IMG/VR virus record: IMGVR_UViG_3300024336_000005
Coordinates: 124,001 to 188,000 of that record
DNA: 64,000 bases
Strand: one strand, 5' to 3'
Part shown: positions 5,454-19,487 of the stretch, in pieces
How positions within the stretch are numbered: the stretch's first letter is position 1
Layout: the number at the start of each line of letters is the position of its first letter
Made by a program: the position numbers and the translations under genes
The notes under the pieces: generated by a model
Told to the model about the DNA's origin: nothing
Database searches by the model: none
What the model saw: only the letters and a program-made list of their open reading frames with translations

Positions 5454-5479
5454 CAAGTACTGAAACGCAAAGGATGAAA

Positions 5480-5740: not shown

Positions 5741-5749
5741 GGATAAATA

Positions 5750-7255: not shown

Positions 7256-7264
7256 GAAGACATA

Positions 7265-7355: not shown

Positions 7356-7472
7356 GTCCTTTGCTTGGCAAGCCAAGGCTAGGACTGGATCATTGGGCGG
7401 AGGCTTAACCTTACCAAAGGGCACCAAAAATATATAGGTGTGGTTGCTAATGATTAGCGACCGTAAGGTTAA

Positions 7473-7547
7473 TGCGGAATAGAGAAGCCAGGTTATCTCG
7501 CTAGCCTCATAAGCTGGAGATCGCAGGTTCAAATCCTGCTTCCGCTA
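7473..7547 (+). tRNA. tRNA-Met(CAT), initiator-like
   Basis: T1/T72 mismatch, A11-T24, TTCAAAT T-loop, loop CTCATAA. Confidence 0.88.
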
Positions 7548-7549
7548 CA

Positions 7550-7620
7550 TTCCCAAGATAAGAAAATCAAATGCAATCGCGGTTAACTTTTGTAGTTTTT
7601 GCTTAGGCTTATCTTGGGAA
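7550..7620 (+). repeat. 13 bp perfect inverted repeat right after tRNA-Met
   Basis: TTCCCAAGATAAG 7550-7562 / CTTATCTTGGGAA 7608-7620. Confidence 0.7.
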
Positions 7621-7630
7621 CATTTTCTTA

Positions 7631-7699
7631 CTCCTAGAGAGGAGGAGAAAGACTGTCCTGCGCTCCTCTTCCACTACGTGGTCGCGGATGCTCGGAGTC
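7631..7699 (+). ncRNA. repeated structured RNA motif, copy 4
   Basis: CTCCT-AGAG-AGGAG-GAGA; GACT..CC-TGCGC-TCC...GGA-TGCTC-GG-AGTC. Confidence 0.55.
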
Positions 7700-7701
7700 A
7701 G

Positions 7702-7796
7702 TTGCTTGTTAACACAGGTTTACCTCAGGCTACGGAGCTTGCTCAATGCTTGAGCTTCGCCCCTAGGCCTCCAGGTAAACCACAGTAAACAAGCAA
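7702..7796 (+). ncRNA. long irregular hairpin
   Basis: 7702-7710/7788-7796, 7717-7725/7773-7781, apical GCTCAA/TTGAGC. Confidence 0.5.
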
Positions 7797-7823
7797 GCGA
7801 CCTAAGGCTTGCCTTGGGGTCGG

Positions 7824-7897
7824 GCCCGCTTAGCTTAATGGATTAAAGCGACGGTCTACGAAGCCGTTAAATCTAGGTTCGAATCCTAGAGTGGGTG
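7824..7897 (+). tRNA. tRNA-Arg(ACG)
   Basis: ACGGT-CTACGAA-GCCGT; CTAGG/CCTAG T-arm. Confidence 0.9.
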
Positions 7898-7907
7898 CAT
7901 AGTCTAA

Positions 7908-7975
7908 CTCTCAGAAGAGAGGAGACGTACATAACGACAGCCCCTGCGCTCAACTACGTTGATGCTCATGTCTGT
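7908..7975 (+). ncRNA. repeated structured RNA motif, copy 5
   Basis: CTCTC-AGAA-GAGAG-GAGA; TGCGC-[TCAAC/GTTGA]-TGCTC. Confidence 0.55.
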
Positions 7976-8041
7976 CTGTCGGATTCCCCAAGGGTAACCC
8001 GACGATCATATAGACTTATGAACTTCGGTCTATGGGTTTAT

Positions 8042-8121
8042 GCCAGCGTGGCTCAGTGGCGACAGCACCGATCTTGTAAGTCGGTATCTCAACATCGTAG
8101 GTTCGATTCCTACCGCTGGCA
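8042..8121 (+). tRNA. tRNA-Thr(TGT) with a 12 nt variable loop
   Basis: GCCAGCG/CGCTGGC acceptor, CCGAT-CTTGTAA-GTCGG. Confidence 0.88.
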
Positions 8122-8136
8122 CATAAGGAGAGAAAT

Positions 8137-8235
8137 ATGTTCTTGTTAATTGGTTTGCTTTGTCTCATTGCAGGAGCCTACAAGGTTGCACTGCTGTTTG
8201 TAATCCTTTCTGTATTCCTTGGGGAATGGCAATGA
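8137..8235 (+). CDS. small hydrophobic peptide (32 aa)
   Basis: RBS AAGGAG; MFLLIGLLCLIAGAYKVALLFVILSVFLGEWQ; stop overlaps the next ATG. Confidence 0.45.
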   Translation: MFLLIGLLCLIAGAYKVALLFVILSVFLGEWQ

Positions 8236-8546
8236 AGCATCCAATAAGGCCCAGCCCGAGAAGGGTTACCATTTCTCCTTACAATTCTTTAAGATGGGCA
8301 TTCAAAGAATCAGGATTATCCTTTGAAGAATTCCTTGATGCAGACTTAGTTACACGTGACTGTGGTTGCTACCATGACTGTAGCTGTACTGGAGTGGACC
8401 TTCTAGTAGAGACTGATGACCACAAAGAAGCCATGAGTAAATACAACAAAGTTTTACTTGAGTGGCATCTTTGGGAGGAAGGGGAAATGGAAAGGAAGGA
8501 GAGGCTCCAGCTTGAGGAGCTCAAGGCTAAATATGAGGCAAATTAA
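8232..8546 (+). CDS. hypothetical protein
   Basis: ATGA-coupled ORF. Confidence 0.55.
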   Translation: MKHPIRPSPRRVTISPYNSLRWAFKESGLSFEEFLDADLVTRDCGCYHDCSCTGVDLLVETDDHKEAMSKYNKVLLEWHLWEEGEMERKERLQLEELKAKYEAN

Positions 8547-8743
8547 TGCACTGTTGTGAAAGCATGGCCAACCAGTTCAGTAGCAAATGTAAGCAGCATG
8601 GTGTTGGGTGTCATGTGGTAGTAGATGGAGGCAAGCATCGGAGGTACCTCCTGCGAGCCGAAAATGCTAAGTACGCTTTCTTCTTCTGTCCTTGGTGCGG
8701 TAAGAGAGTTCAGGAAGAATTGACATCAGATGAAAAAGATTGA
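8546..8743 (+). CDS. small Cys-rich protein
   Basis: CCESM...FCPWCG. Confidence 0.55.
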   Translation: MHCCESMANQFSSKCKQHGVGCHVVVDGGKHRRYLLRAENAKYAFFFCPWCGKRVQEELTSDEKD

Positions 8744-9158
8744 CGAACTTGGAGCCTCCTTACGGGAAGCCTTAGAGTCCGCTACTGCTGTAGCTCAGGA
8801 AAGCCCCGCTGTCTTTAGACACGGGGCTGTTTTGTTTAAGGGAAGAAAGATTCTAAAGGCCGGGTGCAACGAATACAGAGCTGTTCGTTGGGCCTGGCCT
8901 TCTTCATTTGTGCAAGAAGAGGATGGAGAACTTTCTCAGATTAGGTTGAACAATATGCATGCAGAAGTATCTTGTATGCATAATGTGAGACGGGAGAATA
9001 TCAGGGGGAGTGATATCCTCGTGGTTAGGATAAATAATCAGGGCACTCTCATGTATTCGAGACCCTGTAAGAGGTGTATGTGCGCGATGGCCCTTAAGAA
9101 AGTGCGTCGTTGTTACTTTAGTGTTGATTCAGAAACGATTGGAATAGTTCAGCCATGA
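8730..9158 (+). CDS. CMP/dCMP-type zinc-dependent deaminase
   Basis: HGAV, HAEV, SRPCKRC. Confidence 0.8.
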   Translation: MKKIDELGASLREALESATAVAQESPAVFRHGAVLFKGRKILKAGCNEYRAVRWAWPSSFVQEEDGELSQIRLNNMHAEVSCMHNVRRENIRGSDILVVRINNQGTLMYSRPCKRCMCAMALKKVRRCYFSVDSETIGIVQP

Positions 9159-9325
9159 ATGATGACTTGGAAGAGTTGGAGAAGAGCCCGTATCCGAAGA
9201 GGCTCCGTCAACCACCAACGCCTAAGACAAGGCGAGGTAGGCTAAGTCCTTTTGATAGAAGGTCTCGCAAGCAAGACTATCTTGATCATTATGATGAAGA
9301 TGAAGGAGATGATGATGACGAGTGA
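9155..9325 (+). CDS. small protein with a basic middle and acidic tail (56 aa)
   Basis: ATGA overlap; MNDDLEELEK...DEDEGDDDDE; below the track cutoff. Confidence 0.45.
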   Translation: MNDDLEELEKSPYPKRLRQPPTPKTRRGRLSPFDRRSRKQDYLDHYDEDEGDDDDE

Positions 9326-9749
9326 TATCTTTATTCCAATTCTATATGATGTGACTGGGATCTATATGATTAGCTTAAGGACCTTTGATAGGCCCTTAAG
9401 GTACTTTGATGATCCTGACTCTCCTTTGTTGAATAACTTTTGGAGAGTGATTGGCAAGAAGCATAAGACTTCTGTTAAGGATGGCGATCCCGTTGTGATG
9501 GGCGAGTCCTATCAGTGGGGGCTTAAGTACGTCTTCATTAAGTCAAAGAACATCAGCTACGTCAAGGAGTGGAAAGAGTTTCAGTGCACTCAGCTGAAGA
9601 ATATGACAGATGTCTTCTCTTTGGAGATGCCAGCTGAATTGCAGATTGCATTGCTTTCTATCATTGCGACAGAGCTAGGCGAAAAGGAAGTGGTTAAGGC
9701 TGAGGCTCCTAAGATCCGTCGCCCAGTCATAGTTGATACCACGATATGA
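9315..9749 (+). CDS. hypothetical protein
   Basis: ORF in the operon run. Confidence 0.55.
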   Translation: MTSDIFIPILYDVTGIYMISLRTFDRPLRYFDDPDSPLLNNFWRVIGKKHKTSVKDGDPVVMGESYQWGLKYVFIKSKNISYVKEWKEFQCTQLKNMTDVFSLEMPAELQIALLSIIATELGEKEVVKAEAPKIRRPVIVDTTI

Positions 9750-10162
9750 GCTCGTCATTTTGGGATGCCATTCAAGCAAAGTATGTCTTTGCTAATGGCG
9801 GGGATGAATTGAAAGAGAGTGAGCTTGCCTCCCTTGTCTCTACCAATCCCATCCAGCATGACTATATCATTACATCAGATGGAAGAACTGTTAGCGCCTA
9901 TGATGAGAGTGTCTCGATAAGAGACATCTTTCTCTTCTTTAGGAAGCGCATGCCGACTATCAAGTTCGACATTCGAGAGCACCTTTTCAAGCCGACTACC
10001 CCAGCTGAAGCAATTGCCACAAAGTTTATGGTATACAATCAGCTTGCTGGCTATCTTTCTGTGACTAAGGTTAATAATAATGGAGCGTGTTACTTGGGTA
10101 ACGCTCGGCTTCCTTATGAAAAGGCTGAGGAGTGGCATAGAAATGGGGATACAATCCACTAA
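9746..10162 (+). CDS. hypothetical protein
   Basis: ATGA-coupled. Confidence 0.55.
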   Translation: MSSSFWDAIQAKYVFANGGDELKESELASLVSTNPIQHDYIITSDGRTVSAYDESVSIRDIFLFFRKRMPTIKFDIREHLFKPTTPAEAIATKFMVYNQLAGYLSVTKVNNNGACYLGNARLPYEKAEEWHRNGDTIH

Positions 10163-10349
10163 GACGTGGTTCGCCATTTACTTTGATGGAACAGTAGAAG
10201 AGCTGCACAGAAGATCTGTTAAAGAAATTGAGATGTATGAGACACAAAAAATTGAAAAAGGGTATTGCATTGGACGAATAGATAAACTTCGCCTGATATT
10301 GGTTGGTCCACAGATTTGGATTGAATCCTTTTTCCATAGCATTGGATAA
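10143..10349 (+). CDS. hypothetical protein
   Basis: Short overlapping ORF. Confidence 0.45.
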   Translation: MGIQSTKTWFAIYFDGTVEELHRRSVKEIEMYETQKIEKGYCIGRIDKLRLILVGPQIWIESFFHSIG

Positions 10350-10354
10350 TATTT

Positions 10355-10924
10355 ATGGATCTATTTGAAATCCTTCTTCCTCCGGCCACTGATCCTATAA
10401 CAGTTGATCTTTTAAGGAGAGAGATTTGGATTGTAGGTGCTGTTCTTGAAGGATCTTCTCAGACAGTTGTGAGAGGCCTAAGGGAGATGTACCGTCTCCA
10501 TCCCGAAGCTCCCATCTCAGTTTTTGTTAACTGTGAGGGTGGAGATCCGAATGAGGCGTTGGTGATGGCTGACTTTATGTTGGCCTTCAGCAAGAAGCTG
10601 ACAGTTAAGACAAGTGTTGTAGGCACGTCTTACAGTGCGGCAACATTAATAAGTGCGGCTGGCACCAAGGGTCATCGCTATGCGATTCCCTCTGCTGAGT
10701 TTCTCATCCATGCTCTTTCAATAGGTCACATTGGTGGCAAGATTGAAGACGTTGAGGAGACTACACGGCACCTAATTAGACTGAATGGAAAGCTGGCCTC
10801 TCACTTGAGCTCTATCACAGGGATGGAGATGTCAAGAGTTGAAGCTATGATGAGTAAAGAAACTTTTTTGAATGCCCAAGAAGCTATCCAGTGTGGTTTG
10901 TGTGACCAGATTGGTATGATTTAA
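10355..10924 (+). CDS. clpP: ClpP-like protease subunit
   Basis: VNCEGG, SYSAATLI (Ser), FLIH (His), KETFLNAQEA (third triad residue appears to be Glu). Confidence 0.88.
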   Translation: MDLFEILLPPATDPITVDLLRREIWIVGAVLEGSSQTVVRGLREMYRLHPEAPISVFVNCEGGDPNEALVMADFMLAFSKKLTVKTSVVGTSYSAATLISAAGTKGHRYAIPSAEFLIHALSIGHIGGKIEDVEETTRHLIRLNGKLASHLSSITGMEMSRVEAMMSKETFLNAQEAIQCGLCDQIGMI

Positions 10925-10941
10925 CCCCGAAAGGAGATAGT

Positions 10942-11418
10942 ATGAATCCTAATCAAGTGATTCGTTTTGATGAACTCGTAGACAGGTTGGTGGAAGCCAG
11001 CGGAGAGTTCAAGTTGCATGTAAACAAGGCAGAGAGAGTCTGCGTGTCGGCAACGGTGGGAACTAACCCTCCCGTTATCGTCTTTGCTGGCAATGGAGAG
11101 AGCGCAAGCAATGCTGCGATCCGCGCCTGCGCACAGCTCGTCGCTCAGCTCCCCCCTCCTGTTGATCATGCAGCAGTTGCACGAGCAGCTGCAGCGGTTC
11201 GCCAGGGAGCGGCAGATCGCCTCCGCACGCGCCTTAGTGAGGTTTCCTCCGACCTTTTGTCGCTGGGACGTCAGGCGGATGCTCTAGTGGCAAGGTTCCC
11301 CACCTGTGCTGCAGATGAGATTACCTATATTGCAGAAGAACTGGAAGAGGTAAGAAACGATCAGGCTGATTTTCAGACCCTGGCAGATTCACTCAGAGAG
11401 CAGCTAGCAGCTCTCTGA
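10942..11418 (+). CDS. hypothetical protein with a C-terminal coiled coil
   Basis: Strong RBS AAAGGAGA. Confidence 0.7.
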   Translation: MNPNQVIRFDELVDRLVEASGEFKLHVNKAERVCVSATVGTNPPVIVFAGNGESASNAAIRACAQLVAQLPPPVDHAAVARAAAAVRQGAADRLRTRLSEVSSDLLSLGRQADALVARFPTCAADEITYIAEELEEVRNDQADFQTLADSLREQLAAL

Positions 11419-11456
11419 ACCCGAGCATAAGCTCAAACAATCGAAAGGAAAATAAA

Positions 11457-11639
11457 ATGAGAAGAATTGCAAGATACAATGGTACCACCTGGGCAATGGA
11501 GGACGTTCCTGCGAACGTGTTCCTCGACATGGCCCTCGTTCCTGTTTACCCTGACCTTCGAGGCGCCACTTGGGTGGAGTCAGTAGTTGGAGATGAAATC
11601 ATCTTCGATTACCAGAAGAGAGCTGGCGAAAAGGGTTAA
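11457..11639 (+). CDS. ubiquitin-like protein (PRTRC protein C / Prok_Ub type)
   Basis: RIARYNG...YPDLRGA...FDYQKRAGEKG; C-terminal Gly, like the recalled PRTRC-C pattern FRYNG..YPEL..RAVGTKG; RBS GAAAGGA. Confidence 0.78.
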   Translation: MRRIARYNGTTWAMEDVPANVFLDMALVPVYPDLRGATWVESVVGDEIIFDYQKRAGEKG

Positions 11640-11647
11640 TCCATTAT

Positions 11648-11669
11648 GACCCCGCCTTCGGGCGGGGTC
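11648..11669 (+). terminator. GC-rich hairpin after the Ubl gene (weak U-tract)
   Basis: GACCCCGCC-TTCG-GGCGGGGTC then TATTA. Confidence 0.6.
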
Positions 11670-11690
11670 TATTAATGATAGGATGGTTCA

Positions 11691-11981
11691 ATGAATATTG
11701 AGAAGATGGCTGATGAATTAAGTCAGCATCGTATAGCCGAGGGCGGGATGCCACAAGAAGACATTGAGGCTTTAGACTCTTTGCTTGATGCTGTTTTAGC
11801 TTCTGGCTCAGTCTCTTCTCAACTTTCATTGTTAGTAGAGCATTCTAACTATGATGCTCTACTAAGACCCATCTTACTCGCAATTGAAGTAGGGGCCAGA
11901 GAAGAGCCTCTCTTTGATAAGCTTGTAGAAGGCATGGCAAAGGCCCCCAGCAGCATTGATGTATCGGAGATGTTGATATGA
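11691..11981 (+). CDS. hypothetical protein in the Ubl cassette
   Basis: ATGA-coupled to the next gene. Confidence 0.6.
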   Translation: MNIEKMADELSQHRIAEGGMPQEDIEALDSLLDAVLASGSVSSQLSLLVEHSNYDALLRPILLAIEVGAREEPLFDKLVEGMAKAPSSIDVSEMLI

Positions 11982-12568
11982 ATCTGGTGTCTTACATTGA
12001 ACAGACAGATAAGTTTCCTGACGTCACCGAAAAAGTCAAGAAGGTAGAAGCAATCTACAGAAAGATGGCCTATCTTGAAGCGAATAAGTGGCTCAAGGAT
12101 AGCGATAAGATCCTTAGATACAAGGGAAAGAAGGATATTAAAGCATTCGCTAGTGACACTTGGCCTCGCTCAGCATGGGCTCTTATTTCTGGTGCCGTAG
12201 TTAAGCCGGCCTTTCTTGGTTGTGCCCATATGCATCAGCTAAAGAAGAGGCCGGACTCATCCTTTGAGATTAGCTTTAAGGATGGACAGGGATATCAGAG
12301 CCCTTACTATGGCAGAAATATGGCTACGGTTGCCGCTCGAAGAGAGTGGAGAGATAGATGCCGCGCCATAGCCGGCGGAGGAGATGTCACCTGGGCTTGG
12401 GAAACGCACAGAACAGAAGCAGATGGGATAGCCATATTAAGAGTGAATTATAAGAAGTCAAATCTGGTATCGACTGCGGCTGATAGAATCTCATTTGAAA
12501 AGCTTGCTACAGATGTAGAAGCGCTTGCGACTTTAGTAAAGGTCGCAATGGAAGGAAGAGTAATTTGA
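11978..12568 (+). CDS. hypothetical protein in the Ubl cassette
   Basis: 196 aa; overlaps both neighbours. Confidence 0.65.
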   Translation: MNLVSYIEQTDKFPDVTEKVKKVEAIYRKMAYLEANKWLKDSDKILRYKGKKDIKAFASDTWPRSAWALISGAVVKPAFLGCAHMHQLKKRPDSSFEISFKDGQGYQSPYYGRNMATVAARREWRDRCRAIAGGGDVTWAWETHRTEADGIAILRVNYKKSNLVSTAADRISFEKLATDVEALATLVKVAMEGRVI

Positions 12569-13263
12569 GCTACTCAAAGCTTTTGATGACCCTTGTCCCC
12601 GGAGAGACAACAGTAGGGGTCCTCATCGAGAAGAAGAATGGGACTAAGGAAACCTTTAGGGTTGCACAAGACTCAATTTCTTCTATCTTTTCAGGGAACT
12701 ATTGTTCTGGATACTTGCCCTCCTCTCAGGATGGCGTTGTCTATCTAGAAGAAAAGGAAGGCAACAAGTTAGTGGTCATCCAGCGAGGGGCCAGAGAGGC
12801 TCAGGATCTTCAGTGGAATGACCATACTGGGACTCGTGAGCAGATGAAGATAAAGACAAAGACTCCGAATGCCTTCTTCGTCTTTGTCTTGGGTCCGTCA
12901 GAGGGTGGATACAGGATTAAGAAGGAGCGTATCTTTGTTTCGACTGGTCCGACCAGAGGGCCTACGACCCCTCTGTATAATGCAGAATGGTTGGGCAATG
13001 TATACAATCGTTCGCCTAGCGATGGCGCGAGGACAAACATTTGTTGGGGGACAACTACTGTTGCTCCAATGGGAATTGTAAGTGTCTCTTCTTTGATGAA
13101 TATCGCTAACGATTTCTTTACTCAGGACTTTACACAGCACCTACGTGGGACAAGAGCCATCTGGGAAGAATACAATAATACCAGAAGCTTTAGAGAGACT
13201 CAGCGTATGACTTTGGCTGAAGTGATCAGGAGGATGTGGGATGGACTTCCGGACACCCATTGA
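12565..13263 (+). CDS. prokaryotic E2-like protein (Prok-E2_D / PRTRC protein B type)
   Basis: PNAFFVF..TPLYNAEWLGNVY..NICWG (putative catalytic Cys). Confidence 0.72.
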   Translation: MSYSKLLMTLVPGETTVGVLIEKKNGTKETFRVAQDSISSIFSGNYCSGYLPSSQDGVVYLEEKEGNKLVVIQRGAREAQDLQWNDHTGTREQMKIKTKTPNAFFVFVLGPSEGGYRIKKERIFVSTGPTRGPTTPLYNAEWLGNVYNRSPSDGARTNICWGTTTVAPMGIVSVSSLMNIANDFFTQDFTQHLRGTRAIWEEYNNTRSFRETQRMTLAEVIRRMWDGLPDTH

Positions 13264-14356
13264 GCCTAAGCCTGAATTTCTTAAGAAGTTCGAAGCTCAA
13301 GAGTGGGCGGTGCACCTTGGAGAAATTCCAGAGACTTTAGTAAGGAACTCAACCCTCTCCATCTTTGGAGATGGTAAGTATCTCACAAGGTCAAATCCCA
13401 TTGGGACTTTTACGCGCAGAATTGAGCGTATGGATATTCCTACATTGGATCATGGACCCGACCCAAGCTTCTCCTTGAAGCTACCTAAGGTGCCTGCTGC
13501 TATTCTGATGAAGCAGGTGAGCTTCTACCGTGAGGTAATGAAGCTCTTTAATGATGCAGAAGCCTACTCCATTGTCATGTATGACACTGTAGAAGAGCAA
13601 TACTTTTTGGTCATTCCTGAGCAGACCATCTCTAAGGCGCACGTTAAGTACGATCAGCCTGAGCTAAGGAAGAAGTACCCTTCCGACCGCTACATTGAAG
13701 TTATCTCTGCTCATAGTCACAACTCTATGAATGCATACTTCTCTCCCCTTGATGACAAGGACGAGAAGGGAGATATTCTATACATGGTGATGGGTAAGTT
13801 GAACCAAGAGGTTCCAACCTATTGCATCCGTGCAAATGTGGCTGGTGCGGAGTGCGTCAAGCTTCCCCTTGAGGATCTGTTTGATCTTTCTGAAGAGAAC
13901 TGGGCAGAGCTTTCTCCCTATTGGGAAGACCTTCATGACAGCACTTGGGTCGAGCAGCTCCATGTTCGAGGGCCTGTTGTTAGTGCTCACTCTCAGTTTG
14001 ATCAGATGCTTAAGACCTTTCAGGGCTCTCGCCCAAGAAGGCCTTTCACTGGTAGAACAACGGGAAGCCAGATGGACTTCTTTAACCAGACCGAAAGTGA
14101 AGTGGGGAGCGAAGGCTCTGAGCAAAAGGAATTCATTACAATCGCCTGTGCCTTGATTAAGGACGCTAGAAGCTTACCTCCTGAGCAGGTTATGTTTAAT
14201 CTGATATCGAATCTCTTAGAGAGGGGATACGCAGAGGACATTCATGCTGCCATTGTTGCTTGTGATCATGTTGAAGAATTCCAGGCGATGGAAAAAGATG
14301 ATTGGGAATTAGATATGAAATTGCGTATGGAGTTAGATGATGGCTGGTATTCTTAA
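13241..14356 (+). CDS. JAB/MPN+ metallopeptidase (PRTRC protein A type) with a C-terminal extension
   Basis: EAYS...SAHSHNSMNAYFSPLDDKDE = E..HxH..S..D. Confidence 0.88.
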   Translation: MDFRTPIEPKPEFLKKFEAQEWAVHLGEIPETLVRNSTLSIFGDGKYLTRSNPIGTFTRRIERMDIPTLDHGPDPSFSLKLPKVPAAILMKQVSFYREVMKLFNDAEAYSIVMYDTVEEQYFLVIPEQTISKAHVKYDQPELRKKYPSDRYIEVISAHSHNSMNAYFSPLDDKDEKGDILYMVMGKLNQEVPTYCIRANVAGAECVKLPLEDLFDLSEENWAELSPYWEDLHDSTWVEQLHVRGPVVSAHSQFDQMLKTFQGSRPRRPFTGRTTGSQMDFFNQTESEVGSEGSEQKEFITIACALIKDARSLPPEQVMFNLISNLLERGYAEDIHAAIVACDHVEEFQAMEKDDWELDMKLRMELDDGWYS

Positions 14357-15503
14357 TTTCGAGGGAATTGATCCACTCCTAAAGCTTTCTTCAAAGCTTG
14401 GAGTTGCACTTGATAGCGCACAGGATTTGCATCCTGTCTTCCGAATCGCAGGGATTGTTTCTCAGACGGGAACGTTGCTGGACTATGCCGTCAAGCTTGT
14501 TCCCGATCGGCCAGAGACTAAGACGACTGTGGTGCAGAACTACCGAAACGTACATACCTTTACGGCACAACAGCCGACCATAGTTATGGTAGGTTGTGGC
14601 GGTACGGGCAGTCACTTGCTTCCAAATATTCTACAGTATGCAATCACCAAGGCGGCTCAACAGACTGTTACCCCTCCCTGTGTCATCATTATCGATGGAG
14701 ACGGAGTGGAAGAGAAGAACCTAATTCGACAGAGGTTCACTCAAGCGGACCTTGGAGAGAACAAGGCTATTGCCTTGTCTCGTCGCTACAGTGCAGTGTT
14801 TGCTACAAAGATTAAGGCTGTAGACACTTACCTTGAGGACTCAAAGCAGCTGATTGGCCTTATCAAGGACGAAGCCCCAGCGGTTGGTCCTATCATTTTA
14901 GTAGGGGCAGTGGATAATCACAGAGCTCGTGCTATTTTGTGGGACACCTTCTTGAGCGAGACCCAGAGGGAGATCTGGTGGGTTGACGCAGGAAATGAGT
15001 CCTGGCATGGTCAGGTCATTTCTGGGTGCAGGAATGTACAGACAAAGGGAGATTCCCATTGGGCTGCCGCAGGCATCGGAGATGATATTGCTTCTGTTGA
15101 TCTGCCTTGCTTCTTCGATGAGTATCCAAAGGAGTTCATGAAGATTGGCGGTACGCCAACGACTCCACAGAATACTTGTGCTGCAGTGGCTGAGGAGGAC
15201 CCTCAGACCATTCATGCAAACTCATTGTCAGCCCAATGTGCTTCAAACATTATCACTCAGATTCTTGAGGGTGAAGTTAGAGTAATGGGATTGAACTTTG
15301 ATGCAAAGACTGGTCAGGTTAAAGCCAAGATTCTTACACGAGTGAACATCGCCACCGCATACGTTGACATGAAAAACTCAAGAACTTCTCTTCGGGGATT
15401 CCTTGGGGACCTATGCTCGTGGAAGGGGAAGTCTGAACCGGCGACTCTCTTCCCGGGACTATACAAAAAAGCAAAGGTAGAGGATCTCTATACGGCTATT
15501 TAA
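14337..15503 (+). CDS. E1/ThiF-family adenylating enzyme (PRTRC ThiF type)
   Basis: GCGGTG, DGDGVEEKNLIRQ, GENKA, AVDNHRAR, WVDAGN, NTCA..Q..N. Confidence 0.92.
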   Translation: MMAGILNFEGIDPLLKLSSKLGVALDSAQDLHPVFRIAGIVSQTGTLLDYAVKLVPDRPETKTTVVQNYRNVHTFTAQQPTIVMVGCGGTGSHLLPNILQYAITKAAQQTVTPPCVIIIDGDGVEEKNLIRQRFTQADLGENKAIALSRRYSAVFATKIKAVDTYLEDSKQLIGLIKDEAPAVGPIILVGAVDNHRARAILWDTFLSETQREIWWVDAGNESWHGQVISGCRNVQTKGDSHWAAAGIGDDIASVDLPCFFDEYPKEFMKIGGTPTTPQNTCAAVAEEDPQTIHANSLSAQCASNIITQILEGEVRVMGLNFDAKTGQVKAKILTRVNIATAYVDMKNSRTSLRGFLGDLCSWKGKSEPATLFPGLYKKAKVEDLYTAI

Positions 15504-16357
15504 TGTACAGACAGTATAAAATAAAGAAGCGCAAAGGAGGGTTCAGAACTATTACTGAACCCTCTGACTCTTTAAGTGAGATGCTGTCTTACCTTAAGGT
15601 GCACTTAGACGCCCTGCCCATGAGTGAACATGCTCATGGCTTTATTGTGAATAAGAGTATCATTACAAATGCCCTGCCGCACCGGAACAAAAGATATGTC
15701 CTTAACCTAGACGTTAAGAACTTCTTTCCCAGTGTTAGAAGGCCTCTGATGATGGAAAAGTTAGCTCCCTTCTTTAATGAAGGGAAGCTTCCTCTAGACA
15801 TCAGAGATTGGATTCATGAGTTGTGCTTCTTTGAAGGAGCGCTACCTCAGGGCTCACCAACCTCTCCTGTTCTTTCTAATCTCTATATAGCAGAGATAGA
15901 CGAAGAGCTAGTCAGAGTAGCAGGGGAGATGGACTGTACTTATACTAGGTACGCTGATGATATGACCTTTTCAGGAGGAGACGTCCTGAAAAGTGAGAGG
16001 GATAAGGTGGCGCGCGAGGTCGATCTTCTCTTGCAGAGGATTGAACTAAAGCTCCACCCACGTAAGGTAAAGCTTATGCCATACTATCAGAGACAGATTG
16101 TCACTGGCATTGTGGTAAATAATGAAAAATTGACGCTACCTAGATGGTACAAAGAGGAACTCTTCCTTGCTACAAAGGGAGAGGATCCGTCTACCTTCGA
16201 TGAACAATTCAGGGGTGTTCTTGAGTATGTTCGTTCGGTAGATTCACAATTCTATAAAAAAATGTGCAACCATATGATTGCACCAAAGGAGAATGAAGAT
16301 GGCAACACTTCCAGAGTGGATCACAGAGGTCCGATTTTATGCAACGACTCCCAGTAG
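15503..16357 (+). CDS. retron-type reverse transcriptase
   Basis: KKRKGGFRTI, NALPH (region X NAxxH), LDVKNFF, LPQGSPTSP, YTRYADD, QIVTGIVVN (region Y VTG); TAATG coupling to E1. Confidence 0.9.
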   Translation: MYRQYKIKKRKGGFRTITEPSDSLSEMLSYLKVHLDALPMSEHAHGFIVNKSIITNALPHRNKRYVLNLDVKNFFPSVRRPLMMEKLAPFFNEGKLPLDIRDWIHELCFFEGALPQGSPTSPVLSNLYIAEIDEELVRVAGEMDCTYTRYADDMTFSGGDVLKSERDKVAREVDLLLQRIELKLHPRKVKLMPYYQRQIVTGIVVNNEKLTLPRWYKEELFLATKGEDPSTFDEQFRGVLEYVRSVDSQFYKKMCNHMIAPKENEDGNTSRVDHRGPILCNDSQ

Positions 16358-16658
16358 TGACCGCGCCCCTCAGGCACGCGGTTCAGTAACATTTGCTGGT
16401 GCTGTTTACTCACAGTTCACAGTCTGGCAGTCAAACGATGGCGCCCTTCAGGTTGTACTGCCGAGAGTAAAGAACCCAAAGTATAATCCTGACGAAGCTC
16501 ACTCGAAGACCAACAAGATGTACTTCGAAGAGGTTGGTTGTACCAGCGGAGAGAAGAGGGAAGAGCTTGGCAAGGCTATCATTGGAAGCCTTCTCGAAGA
16601 GAGGAAGGCGACTCCAGTCAAGGAGAGCAACACAGGTTCGGACGGCATTCCGTTTTAA
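16299..16658 (+). CDS. SpoVG-like nucleic-acid-binding protein
   Basis: ITEVRF..ARGSVTF..FTVW..LQVVLP..YFEEV..REELGKAI; RBS AGGAG; overlaps the RT 3' end. Confidence 0.65.
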   Translation: MATLPEWITEVRFYATTPSSDRAPQARGSVTFAGAVYSQFTVWQSNDGALQVVLPRVKNPKYNPDEAHSKTNKMYFEEVGCTSGEKREELGKAIIGSLLEERKATPVKESNTGSDGIPF

Positions 16659-16668
16659 GGAGTAGCTC

Positions 16669-16971
16669 ATGAAGATTGAAGACGTCAAGTTCCTCAAGAG
16701 TGACTGCACTGTCTCTGGCGCTATCGTAGATAACGTTGGACGTGGTGAAAATCGTTCGCCCCGTTGGGGCGGAGGAATTCAAGGAACAATTGTAGGGAAT
16801 AATTTTCTGGGGCAGGGAGTGAATGCTGTAACAATCATTCATCATCCCACTCAGATTACAACCACAGTGGACACCTTTACTCCGAAGAGGAACAAAGAGC
16901 TTGCCTTCATTAAGCTCGAGATGCTTGTCAACAAGTGGATCGAAGAAGTTAAGGCGCGGATGGGCTCCTGA
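16669..16971 (+). CDS. hypothetical protein
   Basis: RBS AAGGAG. Confidence 0.65.
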   Translation: MKIEDVKFLKSDCTVSGAIVDNVGRGENRSPRWGGGIQGTIVGNNFLGQGVNAVTIIHHPTQITTTVDTFTPKRNKELAFIKLEMLVNKWIEEVKARMGS

Positions 16972-17291
16972 TGGGAGTCTTCAGCATGGCTCGCACTCAA
17001 GCCTTGGCAACTGCCTTCTCAAAGGCAATTGGAGAGACAGAAGGCTTGCATGATGTTGAGATTGCCTACGCCTTAGCAGCAACGATGCGTGGTCTTGGTG
17101 AAGTGCTATACGATAAAGAAGACACCTCTAAGGAGGCTGTCCTCGAAGACTATGCAAGCTCACCAAGTTGGGCTGGAGCTTTAATGATACATGCAGATCA
17201 AATCCATGTAATCAGAGAGCTTTTCATTCGGACAAAAGAATCCAATATAGATGAAGGAGTTGAAACAGACTCCAAGGAGACAGACGAATAA
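16971..17291 (+). CDS. hypothetical protein
   Basis: TGATG coupling. Confidence 0.6.
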   Translation: MGVFSMARTQALATAFSKAIGETEGLHDVEIAYALAATMRGLGEVLYDKEDTSKEAVLEDYASSPSWAGALMIHADQIHVIRELFIRTKESNIDEGVETDSKETDE

Positions 17292-17863
17292 TGGAGCAGG
17301 AACAGTTTGATACACTAGTTAGAGGGATCTCAGCGGTCCTTGATAATGTAAGGACCCCACAGTTTCGCCCTCCCTCAGTAAACTTCTTCATGCCTAATCG
17401 AGGCCAGCTGCAGTTTACAATCGCCGCTCCACGTTATCGTGAAGTTGAGCGAAAGAATCCTAAGGATGCTGGAGTTCGCTGGGCAGATAAGATGGGAGCG
17501 GTCTTCGTTGAGGCAGCTCCTGCCTTGCCGAACTCAGACAAGCTGGACTGGGACAATAAGAAGATGATCTTTGCCATGTCAGACAAGGACATCGGCCAGG
17601 TCCTTTGGGGCTTTGCTGCCAAGAAGGAAGACATCCGACTTGTTCACGCTCCTGATGAAAATGCAAAGCAAAACAATAAGACCTTCCGAATCCGAAAGGG
17701 AGATGACTTTAGAGGCGAGCCTCAGTGGATTCTATCTCTTACGGAAAAGAAGAATGGAGAGTCAAATGAAGTCTCTGTGTTCATCAAGGGACCGGATATG
17801 ATGAGACTCAAGTCGCTGTTGGAGGGAGCAATTCCCTACATACTGGGCGCCCATCGAACTTAG
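17291..17863 (+). CDS. Whirly-family ssDNA-binding protein
   Basis: GAVFVEAAPA..LDWDNKKMIFAMSDKDIG..LVHAP..NKTFRI..WILSL..IPYILG aligns by eye with recalled plant Whirly motifs. Confidence 0.62.
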   Translation: MEQEQFDTLVRGISAVLDNVRTPQFRPPSVNFFMPNRGQLQFTIAAPRYREVERKNPKDAGVRWADKMGAVFVEAAPALPNSDKLDWDNKKMIFAMSDKDIGQVLWGFAAKKEDIRLVHAPDENAKQNNKTFRIRKGDDFRGEPQWILSLTEKKNGESNEVSVFIKGPDMMRLKSLLEGAIPYILGAHRT

Positions 17864-17872
17864 GAGAATCAG

Positions 17873-18388
17873 TTGCTATTGTGGCTGTACCTTTTGTCAC
17901 TTCCCTTGATGGCTTGCCAGCCATACTCAGACAGCTATTACTCACATCTTCCTGATGCAGAGCACAGAAGTGCGACCTGCCAAAAAGGTGTGAGTATAGG
18001 CATGCTGTATGGTCTGGATCCTGAGATGGTTGCTGCTCTTCTAATGGAAGAGCAAAGGCATGCCGATAAAGATTATGAGGGCGGCATTCGCGGTCCTTTC
18101 CAAGTGTCAGCAAAAGATTGGTGTGAGGGCGGAACGTTTTCCACCTGTGCTGATCTAAACATTGCTGGTGCAAGAGCAATATCTCTTTTAAGAAATTGCT
18201 CAAAAATAAACTGGTCTAATTATGAATGCAAAAGGGAGAGGCGTAAGCCTCTTCCTTGGAGCAAGGTCCTCTGTCACTATGCCTCTGGCAACAAGTGCAC
18301 AAAGAAGGGACTTGCTTACACCAAGCGTGTTATGAGATGGAGAAATAATGTCCGACGCTACAGTAGACTACGACTTGCTAGAAGGTAA
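17873..18388 (+). CDS. lytic transglycosylase-like protein
   Basis: Signal peptide; VAALLMEE, GPFQV, NIAGA..L, HYASG. Confidence 0.55.
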   Translation: MLLWLYLLSLPLMACQPYSDSYYSHLPDAEHRSATCQKGVSIGMLYGLDPEMVAALLMEEQRHADKDYEGGIRGPFQVSAKDWCEGGTFSTCADLNIAGARAISLLRNCSKINWSNYECKRERRKPLPWSKVLCHYASGNKCTKKGLAYTKRVMRWRNNVRRYSRLRLARR

Positions 18389-18854
18389 AGCCATTCGGCT
18401 CCTATTGGAGTCCAATGGAAAGCAGCTCAGCGTAAAGGAAGTCTTTGATGCAATGCTCGCAGAACAGGACGCACATGCTTTAGCCCAAAGGCTTCCTCAA
18501 GAGGAGAGCGCTGCAGCGCAACTTGTTGCTGCCTGCTATGCCTTGGTTCCCGGCCTGCATGTAGAGTCTATGTACTATGGGCTAATCTTAGCAGCCTATC
18601 TGAATAGAAATAATATTGAGCTAAGCGTTGAGTCTACTGATATGACACTTGAAGACTGTGCCATAAAGAGGAAGAGCCTGGCGATGGAGATTAACACCAT
18701 CATGAAGAGGGCCTTTGATCGAACTCAAGAGCACTTCAAGGGTGCAGAAGCAATGCTATTTGAACTAGAAAGGGGACTGCGTGAAGATACTGATCTATGT
18801 GAAGAAGAATCAACAGGAGCCTCTCTCGATAGTCTCGAAGGCTCTGAGGGATAG
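18348..18854 (+). CDS. hypothetical protein
   Basis: 168 aa ORF. Confidence 0.6.
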   Translation: MSDATVDYDLLEGKAIRLLLESNGKQLSVKEVFDAMLAEQDAHALAQRLPQEESAAAQLVAACYALVPGLHVESMYYGLILAAYLNRNNIELSVESTDMTLEDCAIKRKSLAMEINTIMKRAFDRTQEHFKGAEAMLFELERGLREDTDLCEEESTGASLDSLEGSEG

Positions 18855-19305
18855 CATCAAGGGAGGGTTTGAATGGGAGGTTGTCTCCTGTTGGGATGAC
18901 TTCGCCGATGCTCTTGGGGTGTTTAAGGTTTATGCAGAGGATGGTGCGCCAAGACCTGGTGTTCACATTGACCTTAAGTGGCCAAGTCCTACGACATTCA
19001 TAAAGAAGCCCGCGCTAAAAGAAAAGGTGTGGGCAGACATAGAGACTAAGCTTGTCCCCTTGTTTCATAAGAAGGCTCCTGATAGGGAGCCTCTTGTCCT
19101 TACGGACCATCAGCTTCAAACAATCCTAAAGCTCCTTGGGGAGGCAAAGATTCCATTTGAAGTAGACCATCCCAATGGATCAGTCATAGGGATAAATAAG
19201 AACCATGGGGTGGAGTACAGTTTAACTTCTGCAGACGTTGCCTCTATGGTGGCTGCTGCTTGGCTATTCAAGTCTGGCTCGGTACGCCTCGAACGAAAAG
19301 AGTAG
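18781..19305 (+). CDS. hypothetical protein
   Basis: 174 aa ORF; start uncertain. Confidence 0.55.
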   Translation: MKILIYVKKNQQEPLSIVSKALRDSIKGGFEWEVVSCWDDFADALGVFKVYAEDGAPRPGVHIDLKWPSPTTFIKKPALKEKVWADIETKLVPLFHKKAPDREPLVLTDHQLQTILKLLGEAKIPFEVDHPNGSVIGINKNHGVEYSLTSADVASMVAAAWLFKSGSVRLERKE

Positions 19306-19350
19306 TCAAGGAAAGGTAGGTGCTGTTTAGCAAGTATGCTAAATTAGTAG

Positions 19351-19438: not shown

Positions 19439-19487
19439 AAATTCTGATTTTGAATATGTTATCTATAGCATTGATTGAAGAAGGCAG

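What the first reader, a model, noticed from the sequence alone, without database searches (positions are those of the whole stretch)
10355..16357. Phage-encoded ubiquitin-like conjugation cassette (Ubl-E2-JAB-E1) fused into one operon with a retron-type RT, next to ClpP
Seen: a 60 aa Ubl ending AGEKG, an E2-like protein with NICWG, a JAB peptidase with an intact HSH..S..D site and an E1/ThiF with GCGGTG and a Cys. These overlap or abut each other, and the E1 stop overlaps the ATG of an RT with NAxxH, YADD and VTG motifs. ClpP lies just upstream. Known: PRTRC-type cassettes occur on plasmids and ICEs, and bacterial E1/E2/JAB systems (CBASS Cap2/Cap3, Bil) are anti-phage. Inference: this phage carries its own protein-tagging system, possibly controlled by or acting on an RT/ssDNA product, with ClpP as a degradation outlet. 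I do not recall this combination being described, but I could not check the literature.
Basis: partly seen in the sequence, partly recalled or inferred. Interest (0 to 1): 0.92.

Follow-up and report, generated by a model that had tools for sequence, protein, structure and literature searches.

The report
Phage ubiquitin-like tagging cassette beside RT
An uncultured 204-kb phage carries a complete, apparently intact ubiquitin-like tagging kit (tag, E2, trimming protease, E1) of the poorly understood PRTRC type. It is always followed by a retron-related reverse transcriptase and a small SSB-tailed protein, a combination I could not find described, and whether the two sets of genes work together is still unproven.

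Summary
The window is part of a 204-kb IMG/VR jumbo-phage contig.

**Identification of the genes**
- The 60-aa ORF is a PRTRC_C/Prok_Ub-type Ubl. It has a confident beta-beta-alpha-beta-beta model, and G-x-K-G is invariant in 40 orthologue clusters, 22 of which carry extra residues after the last Gly.
- The NICWG protein is a divergent Prok-E2_D/PRTRC_B E2.
- The 371-aa protein is a PRTRC_A-like JAMM peptidase.
- The 388-aa protein is a PRTRC-type ThiF E1 with an invariant Cys.
- The RT belongs to the retron lineage (NAxxH, YADD and VTG invariant) but lacks about 47 N-terminal residues. I found no ncRNA for it.

**Linkage of the RT**
- The RT follows E1 in all 12 related contigs I examined, usually with overlapping stop and start codons.
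- E2-JAB-E1 is far more widespread without an RT: 42 of 46 metagenomic loci, and four cultured jumbo phages.
- The RT's tightest partner is the next gene downstream, a SpoVG-like protein with an SSB-type "IPF" tail. That protein is fused to the RT in at least three relatives.

**Reading**
I read this as two adjacent modules whose functional coupling is possible but unshown. The link to ClpP rests on neighbourhood only. I rate it a new variant of a known kind, with moderately high interest.

The parts
10355..10924 (+). ClpP-family serine protease (189 aa). It is a neighbour of the cassette; membership in the system is not shown.
   Evidence: Pfam CLP_protease 3.8e-32. Ser94 and His119 are invariant, and the third triad position is Asp or Glu, in 8 orthologues. 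It is adjacent to the cassette in most relatives, but five genes away in L016.
10942..11418 (+). 158-aa protein of unknown function, conserved in position.
   Evidence: It has no significant family hit. Orthologues give only scattered weak hits of no consequence.
11457..11639 (+). Ubiquitin-like tag (60 aa) of the PRTRC_C / Prok_Ub type, ending G-E-K-G.
   Evidence: The AF2 model has pLDDT 90.6, a beta-beta-alpha-beta-beta core and a flexible tail. G57, K59 and G60 are invariant. All 40 orthologue clusters carry GxKG, and 22 have 1-8 residues after it. In a mixed set of 40 sequences of which 10 were Ubl orthologues, 5 sequences hit TIGR03738 PRTRC_C (best 3.2e-5) and 2 hit Pfam Prok_Ub (8.8e-5); I presume these are Ubl orthologues.
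11648..11669 (+). GC-rich hairpin 9 nt after the Ubl stop codon, resembling a terminator or attenuator.
   Evidence: The 9-bp stem is GACCCCGCC / GGCGGGGUC with a UUCG loop. Comparable hairpins followed by U-rich tracts lie after the Ubl gene in L008, L009 and L017. The simple terminator scan did not call it, because it lacks a clean T-run.
11691..11981 (+). 96-aa protein, conserved in position but fast-evolving, function unknown.
   Evidence: Orthologues are present in 10 loci but with low conservation. It has no family hit.
11978..12568 (+). 196-aa protein, conserved in position, of variable length (196-568 aa), function unknown. It is a candidate adaptor or target-recognition subunit.
   Evidence: Alignment; no family hit. 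A long ORF occupies the same position in the Bacillus phages KLEB27-3 and WH1, but BLAST found no similarity to them.
12565..13263 (+). E2-like protein (232 aa) of the Prok-E2_D / PRTRC_B family, with candidate catalytic Cys160 in NICWG.
   Evidence: C160, W161 and G162 are invariant in 45 homologues. Of these, 27 hit PF14460 (best 2.7e-12) and 24 hit TIGR03737. hhalign against a bona fide PRTRC_B gives 95.7% probability, E 1e-8, with the Cys aligned. The AF2 model has pLDDT 93. It has no PDB match. Its best BFVD match is a 241-aa phage protein at 1.3e-10.
13241..14356 (+). JAMM/JAB metallopeptidase (371 aa), PRTRC_A-like, with a variable C-terminal extension.
   Evidence: TIGR03735 8e-13 and Prok-JAB 5e-3. 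The HSH-x7-S-x2-D motif and an upstream Glu are conserved in 12 orthologues.
14337..15503 (+). E1-like adenylating enzyme (388 aa) of the PRTRC ThiF family.
   Evidence: TIGR03736 8e-29 and ThiF 2e-12. The G-x-G-G-T-G loop, R131, D193 and Cys281 (followed by PQTI-AN) are invariant in 11 orthologues.
15503..16357 (+). Retron-lineage reverse transcriptase (284 aa) without the N-terminal extension.
   Evidence: Retron St85 model 2e-56, 191.5 bits, below the 235-bit cutoff. Its best solved relative is the Ec86 RT at 1.4e-28, with residues 2-258 aligned to 48-303. NAxxH, YADD and VTG are invariant. It falls in a monophyletic phage clade with SH-aLRT 98.
16299..16658 (+). SpoVG-like protein with a low-complexity linker and an SSB-type C-terminal ...IPF tip. 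It is the RT's most tightly linked partner.
   Evidence: The ATG is preceded by AAGGAG. Orthologues end in I/V/L/F/P-P-F. The L015 and L060 orthologues hit Pfam SpoVG at 2e-8 and 1.5e-4. The protein is fused to the RT in L016, L022 and the P0154 contig.
17291..17863 (+). Whirly-family ssDNA-binding protein (190 aa); part of the downstream context.
   Evidence: Pfam Whirly 4.5e-7. It is syntenic in the relatives.

Best explanation
The region holds two adjacent, co-oriented modules that form part of the conserved core of a diverse group of uncultured jumbo phages.

**Module 1 (11457-15503)** is a PRTRC-related ubiquitin-like conjugation system.
- The 60-aa Ubl is made in excess; a hairpin after its gene is expected to attenuate read-through.
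- In the many orthologues that carry extra C-terminal residues, the JAMM peptidase trims the Ubl to expose the terminal Gly of G-x-K-G.
- The ThiF-type E1 adenylates that Gly and takes it onto Cys281.
- The Prok-E2_D E2 receives it on Cys160 and passes it to lysines of unknown host or phage targets.
- The two fast-evolving proteins p96 and p196 may choose those targets.
- The JAMM peptidase can also reverse the tagging.

**Module 2 (15503-16658)** is a retron-derived RT paired with a SpoVG-fold protein. That protein carries an SSB-like acidic/IPF tail and probably binds the RT's single-stranded product, or brings the RT to SSB-interacting replication and repair proteins. A Whirly ssDNA binder lies just downstream.

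Module 2 was acquired once, immediately downstream of E1, and has stayed there, usually translationally coupled to E1.

**Shown:** the homologies, the conserved catalytic residues, the gene order and the fusions. **Inferred:** conjugation chemistry, the targets, RT activity and template, and any cross-talk between the two modules. ClpP is a conserved neighbour and is not demonstrably part of either module.
For: **Family assignments**
- Searches place the four genes in PRTRC_C, PRTRC_B, PRTRC_A and PRTRC ThiF.

**Conserved residues**
- E2 Cys160.
- E1 Cys281 and the nucleotide loop.
- The JAMM motif.
- The Ubl GxKG, with variable trailing residues in 22 of 40 clusters.
- The Ubl fold prediction.

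**Gene order**
- The order Ubl-p96-p196-E2-JAB-E1-RT-SpoVG recurs in 12 related contigs.
- E1 and RT overlap or abut in 8 of 12.

**E2-JAB-E1 without RT**
- 42 of 46 metagenomic loci lack an RT.
- So do the cultured phages WH1, KLEB27-3, Arash and D69.

**RT and the SpoVG-like protein**
- They are fused in L016, L022 and the P0154 contig.
- The SpoVG-like gene lies within 135 nt of the RT, or overlaps it, in L023, L027, L060 and L072.
- The SSB-type C-terminus is seen.

**Insertions between E1 and RT**
- An HNH endonuclease lies there in L023, confirmed by Pfam, and by sequence pattern only in L027.
- An unknown ORF lies there in L060 and L072.
Against: - No biochemical evidence exists for any step.
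- The window proteins score below NCBIfam's curated cutoffs for PRTRC_A and PRTRC_ThiF. The window E2 and Ubl are linked to their families only through profiles and orthologues.
- The E2 model has no match to solved UBC folds in Foldseek. The Ubl model has no significant PDB match.
- The RT clade has never been seen apart from E1 in any locus I examined. The stop/start overlap suggests co-translation. Both points fit a single integrated system as well as they fit two modules.
- No template or ncRNA for the RT was found.
Confidence: 0.55

Rival explanations
1. **One integrated system.** The RT or its cDNA/ssDNA product senses, activates or is the substrate of the Ubl conjugation machinery. For example, the Ubl could be conjugated to the RT or the SpoVG-like protein, or the RT product could license E1/E2. 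The block from the Ubl to the SpoVG-like gene would then be a single functional unit.
For: - The RT is immediately downstream of E1 in all 12 related contigs, with stop/start overlap or abutment in 8 of them.
- No member of the RT clade (32 clusters, monophyletic) was found away from E1 in any context I examined.
- The order E2-JAB-E1-x-RT-SpoVG is kept even in L060 and L072. Their RT is only 24-25% identical to the window's, and L060's flanks (for example DUF2958) look different.
Against: - Most E2-JAB-E1 loci have no RT, so the Ubl system does not need one.
- Selfish HNH genes insert between E1 and RT.
- The only fusions involving the RT are with the downstream protein.
- The whole region, out to RNR and RecA, is syntenic in this phage group, so adjacency could be inherited rather than selected.
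Confidence: 0.25
2. **Sulfur-carrier or other adenylation chemistry instead of protein tagging.** The Ubl would act like ThiS, MoaD, CysO or QbsE. The E1 would adenylate it (and it might then be thiocarboxylated) to modify a nucleotide, tRNA or small molecule. JAB would only mature the carrier, and the E2-like protein would have a non-conjugating role.
For: - A ThiF-type E1, a small beta-grasp protein with a C-terminal Gly and a JAB that trims a precursor is also the layout of the CysO/Mec+ and QbsE/QbsD pathways (established knowledge, recalled from memory).
- Nucleotide-metabolism genes and tRNAs surround the locus.
- The nearest solved E1 relatives by sequence include MccB, a peptide-adenylating enzyme.
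Against: - The absolutely conserved Cys-Trp-Gly in an E2-family protein and the invariant E1 Cys281 argue for a thioester relay.
- I noted no rhodanese, cysteine desulfurase or other sulfur donor in the neighbourhood I scanned.
Confidence: 0.1
3. **The RT is independent cargo.** It would be a retron-type defence or superinfection-exclusion element, or a selfish insert, that happens to sit at this position, as retrons do in P2-like temperate phages.
For: The nearest RT relatives in sequenced phages are retron RTs of P2-like and other temperate phages and satellites, at 27-35% identity. All retron RT hallmark motifs are present.
Against: - The RT is a core gene kept at one position across a group whose E1 has diverged to 30% identity.
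- There is no msr/msd candidate and no non-coding space next to it in the window.
- No recognisable retron effector is present.
- The N-terminal extension is missing.
- The genome looks like a large phage with no integration module seen within the 64-kb window.
Confidence: 0.07

Closest known systems
PRTRC (ParB-related, ThiF-related cassette; TIGR03735-03742) of plasmids, ICEs and some prophages
   Same: It has the same four protein families: PRTRC_C/Prok_Ub Ubl, PRTRC_B/Prok-E2_D E2, PRTRC_A JAB and PRTRC ThiF E1. Its biochemical function is equally unknown.
   Different: - No ParB homologue and no PRTRC_D, E or F matches were found among the neighbours I scanned.
- The scores fall below the curated cutoffs.
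- The proteins are larger: the JAB is 371 aa against a 192-position model, and the E1 is 388 aa against 245.
- The host element is a jumbo phage.
- An RT and a SpoVG-like pair follows the cassette.
E2-JAB-E1 triads of cultured large phages (Bacillus phages vB_BceM_WH1 and vB_BauM_KLEB27-3, Salmonella phage Arash, Vibrio phage D69)
   Same: JAB and E1 are homologous, with BLAST E-values down to 1e-53. The Arash gp248c E2 matches the window's E2 profile at 97% probability with the Cys aligned. Gene order is the same.
   Different: None of these phages has an RT of this clade. The Ubl was not identified there: the 60-aa Arash gp249c is not the Ubl. No ClpP lies next to the triad.
Bacterial anti-phage Ubl systems: CBASS Cap2/Cap3, Bil, Bub (type 6E)
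   Same: They use E1, E2 and JAB logic with a Ubl or Ubl-like C-terminus. The window's E1 gives weak matches to the PADLOC Cap2-type E1-E2 models (4.8e-7).
   Different: - Here E1 and E2 are separate genes of other families (Prok-E2_D rather than a Cap2 or Bil E2).
- There is no cGAS/CD-NTase.
- The system is encoded by the phage rather than the host, so its direction of action is probably the opposite.
- The comparison with Bil and Bub rests on my own knowledge; I did not test it.
Retrons (for example Ec86, St85, types I-XIII)
   Same: The RT is most similar to retron RTs (Ec86 RT 1.4e-28; PADLOC types III-A, XI, XIII and II-A all about 1e-55 to 1e-58). It keeps NAxxH, YADD and VTG.
   Different: - No msr/msd was found.
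- No known effector is present.
- About 47 N-terminal residues are missing.
- Its partner is a SpoVG-like, SSB-tailed protein.
- It forms a separate monophyletic clade.
- It is a core phage gene.
DGR-diversified PRTRC protein B in a Phocaeicola vulgatus prophage (bioRxiv 10.64898/2026.10.01.756045)
   Same: A phage-borne PRTRC component is linked to a reverse transcriptase.
   Different: In that prophage a DGR RT mutagenises the PRTRC_B gene. Here no TR/VR repeats exist and the RT is of the retron lineage, not DGR type.

Membership tests
PRTRC system | PRTRC-type ThiF family E1 (TIGR03736) | tested here: inconclusive
   E 7.9e-29, 100.7 bits, covering model positions 7-239 of 245, but below the curated cutoff of 144.75. 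It is a related, diverged member.
PRTRC system | PRTRC protein A (JAB; TIGR03735) | tested here: inconclusive
   E 8.1e-13, 48.4 bits against a cutoff of 101.8. The JAMM motif is intact.
PRTRC system | PRTRC protein B (Prok-E2_D E2; TIGR03737 / PF14460) | tested here: met
   The window protein gives no direct hit. A profile of its homologues matches a bona fide PRTRC_B at 95.7% probability, E 1e-8, with the Cys aligned. Of 45 homologues, 24 hit TIGR03737 and 27 hit PF14460. Membership holds at superfamily level only.
PRTRC system | PRTRC protein C (small Ubl; TIGR03738 / Prok_Ub) | tested here: inconclusive
   The window protein gives no direct hit. In a mixed set containing 10 Ubl orthologues, 5 sequences hit TIGR03738 (best 3.2e-5) and 2 hit Prok_Ub at 8.8e-5. 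hhalign against the Alteromonas plasmid protein is not significant.
PRTRC system | Associated ParB homologue and PRTRC proteins D, E and F | tested here: not met
   No ParB or PRTRC_D/E/F hit appeared among the ORFs from 9252 to 18854 or among 29 orthologues of p158, p96 and p196. I therefore call it PRTRC-related, not a canonical PRTRC.
Ubiquitin-like protein (beta-grasp with activatable C-terminal Gly) | Beta-grasp fold | tested here: inconclusive
   The AF2 model has pLDDT 90.6 and a beta-beta-alpha-beta-beta order. Foldseek found no significant PDB match; the top list is protein L, protein G, a Ubl domain and SUMO at E 0.3-1.6.
Ubiquitin-like protein (beta-grasp with activatable C-terminal Gly) | Conserved C-terminal Gly on a flexible tail, made as a precursor in some members | tested here: met
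   GxKG is present in 40 of 40 clusters; 18 end at the Gly and 22 carry 1-8 further residues. The tail has low pLDDT.
Ubiquitin-like protein (beta-grasp with activatable C-terminal Gly) | Adenylation, thioester formation and conjugate formation | not testable with these tools
   This needs biochemistry.
Retron | RT with the retron hallmark motifs (NAxxH, YxDD, VTG) | tested here: met
   The motifs are invariant in 9 orthologues. The score, 191.5 bits, is below the St85 family cutoff of 235.
Retron | Adjacent msr/msd non-coding RNA flanked by inverted repeats | tested here: not met
   There is no Rfam match at E <= 1 in 9000-19000 and only tRNAs in the whole window. There is no non-coding gap next to the RT and no inverted repeats of note. 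Structured stretches inside the RT ORF (z about -4.6) were not tested for covariation. An ncRNA elsewhere in the 204-kb genome is not excluded.
Retron | Effector or accessory toxin gene | tested here: not met
   No known retron effector family occurs among the neighbours. The partner is a SpoVG-like protein.
Diversity-generating retroelement | Template and variable repeat pair near the RT | tested here: not met
   Only chance repeats of 25-30 nt were found in 8000-20000.
CBASS Cap2/Cap3-type system | Fused E1-E2 protein (Cap2) with a CD-NTase | tested here: not met
   E1 and E2 are separate genes. The PADLOC E1-E2 models match only the E1 part, at 4.8e-7 and weaker. No CD-NTase hit was found.
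ClpP protease | Ser-His-Asp catalytic triad | tested here: met
   S94 and H119 are invariant and the third position is Asp or Glu in 8 orthologues. I assigned the triad positions from my recollection of the E. coli ClpP motifs.

The most novel reading that the evidence does not exclude
A group of jumbo phages couples a complete ubiquitin-like conjugation system to a retron-derived reverse transcriptase and its SSB-tailed partner. The Ubl machinery would tag or license the RT-ssDNA complex, or would be triggered by it. This would be a previously unknown link between protein tagging and reverse transcription in a virus of bacteria, used for phage DNA replication or recombination, or to disarm host immunity.
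Probability: 0.2. Interest if true: 0.88.

Novelty: new variant of a known kind. Interest (0 to 1): 0.68.

Why it matters
PRTRC cassettes have been annotated on plasmids, ICEs and prophages for well over a decade. I know of no demonstrated function, and the literature I could search still calls them "partitioning" cassettes (PMC13366799).

Here all four enzymatic parts are conserved as core genes of a diverse group of large phages, with every catalytic residue intact. That argues the cassette does essential work during infection. It also offers a compact, self-contained Ubl-E1-E2-DUB set that could be reconstituted in E. coli.

Bacterial E1/E2/JAB systems (CBASS Cap2/Cap3, Bil, Bub) are anti-phage. 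A phage-encoded counterpart raises the prospect of viral protein tagging directed at host or phage targets.

The retron-lineage RT is stripped of its N-terminal extension, has no visible ncRNA and is wedded to a SpoVG-fold protein with an SSB tail. It is a second unstudied feature. A core, non-defence use of a retron-type RT by a phage would be new.

My full-text searches for PRTRC with phage or ubiquitin, ThiF with retron or jumbo phage, Prok-E2 with phage, and SpoVG with RT and phage found no description of this combination.

Tried and rejected
- **DGR reading.** It was prompted by a 2026 preprint in which a DGR diversifies a prophage PRTRC_B gene. I rejected it because the window has no TR/VR repeats and the RT is retron-type.
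- **Retron ncRNA next to the RT.**
  - There are no Rfam hits and no non-coding gap.
  - Structured windows inside coding sequence could not be tested for covariation because the orthologues are too diverged.
- **Programmed frameshift fusing the RT to the SpoVG-like protein at the A7 run (16256-16262).** Rejected: the target frame has a stop five codons later.
- **tRNA-like element as an RT initiation site.**
  - One occurs in the relatives L016 and L019.
  - The window has no counterpart; all of its T-arm motifs belong to its 7 tRNAs.
- **Arash gp249c (60 aa) as the Ubl.** Rejected: it ends RSFV and has no profile similarity.
- **ClpP as the head-maturation protease of a structural module.**
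  - It scores better against true ClpP models than against head-maturation models.
  - It sits among tRNA and DNA-metabolism genes. I left this question open.
- **Foldseek of the E2 and Ubl models against the PDB.** No significant match.
- **p158, p96 and p196.** No family could be assigned.
- **Megablast of the region against 50,697 phage records.** No match.
- **ClpP or p158 orthologues in L008, L015 and L016 by BLAST.** Nothing was found.

Full report
**Observation**

- On the + strand, ORFs at 10355-10924, 10942-11418, 11457-11639, 11691-11981, 11978-12568, 12565-13263, 13241-14356, 14337-15503 and 15503-16357 overlap or lie at most 52 nt apart.
- The quoted motifs are all present: RAGEKG at the C-terminus of the 60-aa ORF, TNICWG, HSHNSMNAYFSPLDD, GCGGTG, and NALPH, YADD and VTG.
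- The E1 stop and the RT start share a base, giving TAATG.
- The window is part of IMG/VR contig UViG_3300024336_000005, which is 204,008 nt long. The same contig appears among the metagenome loci as L021.
- It looks like a large phage. It has seven tRNAs, a class II RNR, an ATP-dependent ligase, a DNA polymerase split around an endonuclease domain, a primase-helicase and a virion protein. Nearly all genes are on one strand.
- It has no close cultured relative.

**What the genes are**

*ClpP.* Pfam scores it at 3.8e-32. It matches true ClpP models better than ClpP-like head-maturation models. Ser94 and His119 are invariant, and an acidic third residue is kept, in eight orthologues.

*E1.* It matches PRTRC_ThiF (7.9e-29) over almost the whole model but below the curated cutoff. 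Eleven orthologues keep the Gly-rich loop, the Arg and Asp residues of the adenylation site, and an invariant Cys281 followed by PQTI-AN.

*JAB.* The 371-aa protein matches PRTRC_A (8.1e-13) and Prok-JAB. It has an exact HxH-x7-S-x2-D JAMM motif plus the upstream Glu in twelve orthologues.

*E2.* The NICWG protein has no direct family hit.
- A profile of seven orthologues, searched against 1.84 billion representative proteins, found 50 relatives.
- In the resulting 45-sequence alignment, Cys160-Trp-Gly is invariant.
- Of these, 27 members hit Pfam Prok-E2_D and 24 hit TIGR03737 PRTRC_B.
- The profile aligns with a bona fide PRTRC_B from an Alteromonas plasmid (itself Prok-E2_D at 2e-30) at 95.7% probability, with the cysteines matched.
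- Its AlphaFold model is confident (pLDDT 93) but has no counterpart among solved structures.
- The nearest predicted viral structure is a 241-aa uncharacterised phage protein (1.3e-10).

*Ubl.* The 60-aa ORF folds confidently (pLDDT 90.6) as beta-beta-alpha-beta-beta with a floppy seven-residue tail.
- Foldseek gives no significant match. The top of the list is the beta-grasp class: protein L, protein G, a Ubl domain and SUMO.
- All 40 orthologue clusters carry G-x-K-G. Eighteen end exactly at that Gly and 22 carry one to eight unconserved residues after it. This is the pattern of Ubl precursors that a JAB or DUB must trim.
- In a mixed set containing ten Ubl orthologues, five sequences hit PRTRC_C (best 3.2e-5) and two hit Pfam Prok_Ub. 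I presume these are the Ubl orthologues.
- A strong GC hairpin lies nine bases after the Ubl stop (11648-11669). Terminator-like hairpins occupy the same place in three relatives. This would give more tag than enzymes.

*p158, p96 and p196.* They are conserved in position, evolve fast and could not be assigned to any family.

**The RT**

- It scores best against retron models: St85 family at 1.8e-56 (below cutoff), and PADLOC retron types III-A, XI, XIII and II-A at about 1e-55 to 1e-58.
- Its closest solved relative is the Ec86 RT (1.4e-28). Residues 2-258 align to 48-303, so the N-terminal extension of about 47 residues found in retron RTs is absent.
- NAxxH, YADD and VTG are invariant in nine orthologues.
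- The phage RTs form one clade, with SH-aLRT 98, apart from 86 bacterial retron-type RTs.
- I found no msr/msd. Rfam gives nothing at E <= 1 around the locus and only tRNAs in the whole window. There is no non-coding gap beside the RT. There are no meaningful repeats, which also excludes a DGR.

**Synteny**

*Close and medium relatives.* The lists of RT and E1 homologues shared contig lengths. I therefore fetched twelve contexts with E1 identity from 55% down to 30%.
- All twelve show Ubl-p96-p196-E2-JAB-E1-RT, followed by a protein of about 110 aa, a Whirly-family protein, an amidase and RNR or RecA.
- E1 and RT overlap or abut in 8 of the 12.
- The whole neighbourhood is syntenic, however, so adjacency alone does not prove a shared function.

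*Wider scan.* A scan of metagenome contigs with an E1 profile returned 79 further loci. I searched them with profiles of each gene.
- Of the 44 loci with room upstream of E1, 35 have both JAB and E2.
- Of the 46 loci with at least 2.5 kb downstream of E1, only 4 have an RT.
- The cultured phages WH1, KLEB27-3, Arash and D69 likewise have E2-JAB-E1 without an RT of this clade.
- In the RT-positive distant loci, an HNH homing endonuclease separates E1 and RT in L023 (Pfam 5e-10), and by sequence pattern in L027. An unknown 338-364-aa ORF separates them in L060 and L072.

**The RT's closest partner**

The gene after the RT (16299-16658, with an AAGGAG ribosome-binding site) is a SpoVG-like protein. 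Its orthologues hit Pfam SpoVG at 2e-8 and 1.5e-4.
- Its C-terminus is a low-complexity linker ending in I/V/L/F/P-P-F. From my own knowledge, this resembles the DDDIPF tip of bacterial SSB.
- In L016, L022 and the contig carrying P0154, this protein is fused in frame to the RT.
- In L023, L027, L060 and L072 it follows the RT within 135 nt or overlaps it. In some closer relatives a small 52-73-aa ORF lies between the two.
- L060 and L072 keep YMDD and the clade-specific PYYQKQ but have lost NAxxH and VTG.
- The fusion points to a functional pair, with a Whirly ssDNA binder two genes further on.

**Interpretation**

The best-supported reading is two adjacent modules.
- The first is a PRTRC-related Ubl conjugation system: trim, adenylate, thioester on E1 Cys281, transfer to E2 Cys160, conjugate to lysines of unknown targets, and reversal by JAB.
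- The second is an RT plus SSB-like pair that makes or handles single-stranded DNA.

Whether the two are mechanistically coupled is open. The invariable position of the RT just after E1 and the stop/start overlaps speak for coupling. The many RT-less cassettes, the insertions between E1 and RT, and the downstream fusion speak against a strict requirement.

ClpP is a frequent neighbour, but it lies five genes away in L016 and is absent next to the cassette in the cultured phages.

I also considered, at lower probability, a sulfur-carrier role and an independent retron cargo.

**Comparison and novelty**

- The cassette is not a canonical PRTRC. It has no ParB and no D, E or F proteins, and its scores are below the cutoffs.
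- It belongs to the same protein families as PRTRC and as unstudied E2-JAB-E1 triads in deposited jumbo-phage genomes.
- PRTRC in prophages has been noted, with a presumed partitioning role (PMC13366799). A DGR that diversifies a prophage PRTRC_B was reported in October 2026 (10.64898/2026.10.01.756045).
- Neither those reports nor my other full-text searches describe a retron-lineage RT, or a SpoVG/SSB-like partner, attached to such a cassette.
- I rate it a new variant of a known kind. It is of real interest because it is compact, conserved and directly testable.

Noticed in passing
window 16299-16658; L016 7869-9014; L022 1877-3043: The SpoVG-fold protein has a low-complexity linker and an SSB-like C-terminal ...IPF tip. 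In at least three relatives it is fused in frame to the C-terminus of the RT.
   Followed up: partly
L016 9015-9587; L019 3650-4074: ORF-free, strongly structured regions (z -4.9 and -3.0) lie after the RT/SpoVG genes of two distant relatives. Both end in a tRNA T-arm motif, GGTTCGATTCC. L019 4019-4066 matches the tRNA-like domain of the Rfam tmRNA model (E 1.2e-6, below gathering), while ARAGORN calls nothing there. This could be a tRNA-like initiation site for the RT. The window has no counterpart.
   Followed up: partly
window 11648-11669: A perfect 9-bp GC-rich hairpin with a UUCG loop lies directly after the Ubl stop. Terminator-like hairpins occupy the same place in L008, L009 and L017. 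This suggests attenuation, so that the tag outnumbers the enzymes.
   Followed up: partly
L002 (Salmonella phage Arash, OQ632216.1) 1519-2274 and 3499-4539: In the GenBank record the E2-like gp248c and the ThiF-like gp246c are annotated as 'structural protein'. The Arash paper lists Gp246-Gp249 among the proteins found by virion mass spectrometry (PMC10585845); whether the gene numbering is the same was not checked. If so, these enzymes may be packaged and injected.
   Followed up: partly
L023 6387-7040; L027 6003-6626: An HNH homing endonuclease is inserted between E1 and RT in distant relatives. Pfam HNH gives 5e-10 for L023. L027 was judged by its N-terminal sequence pattern only.
   Followed up: partly
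window 42509-45359: The DNA polymerase is encoded in two ORFs. The first (546 aa) carries a polymerase N-part followed by an endonuclease domain, and the second (412 aa) carries the polymerase C-part. This may be an insertion of a homing endonuclease or an intein-like element.
   Followed up: no
window 1649-8122: Seven tRNA genes (Arg-TCT, Ile-GAT, Lys-CTT, Phe-GAA, Met-CAT, Arg-ACG, Thr-TGT) are scattered among small ORFs upstream of the cassette.
   Followed up: no
L012 15809-16417: One relative carries a second ClpP-family gene, about 6 kb downstream of the RT and just before RNR.
   Followed up: no
L010 9011-9069: The 57-nt gap between E1 and RT in this relative encodes the missing RT N-terminus (MKYNVFKVPKK...) in another frame. 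This is a frameshift, either a sequencing error or a decayed RT.
   Followed up: no
L060 4803-8545 and 10301-10699; L072: A distant lineage keeps the order E2-JAB-E1-unknown ORF-RT-SpoVG, but its RT has YMDD and has lost NAxxH and VTG. L060 also carries a DUF2958 gene. I recall that family as typical of conjugative elements, so this may be a different kind of mobile element.
   Followed up: partly
window 15950-16290: The 3' third of the RT gene folds into unusually stable hairpins (z about -4.6 in two 150-nt windows). Conservation could not be tested because the orthologues are too diverged at the DNA level.
   Followed up: no
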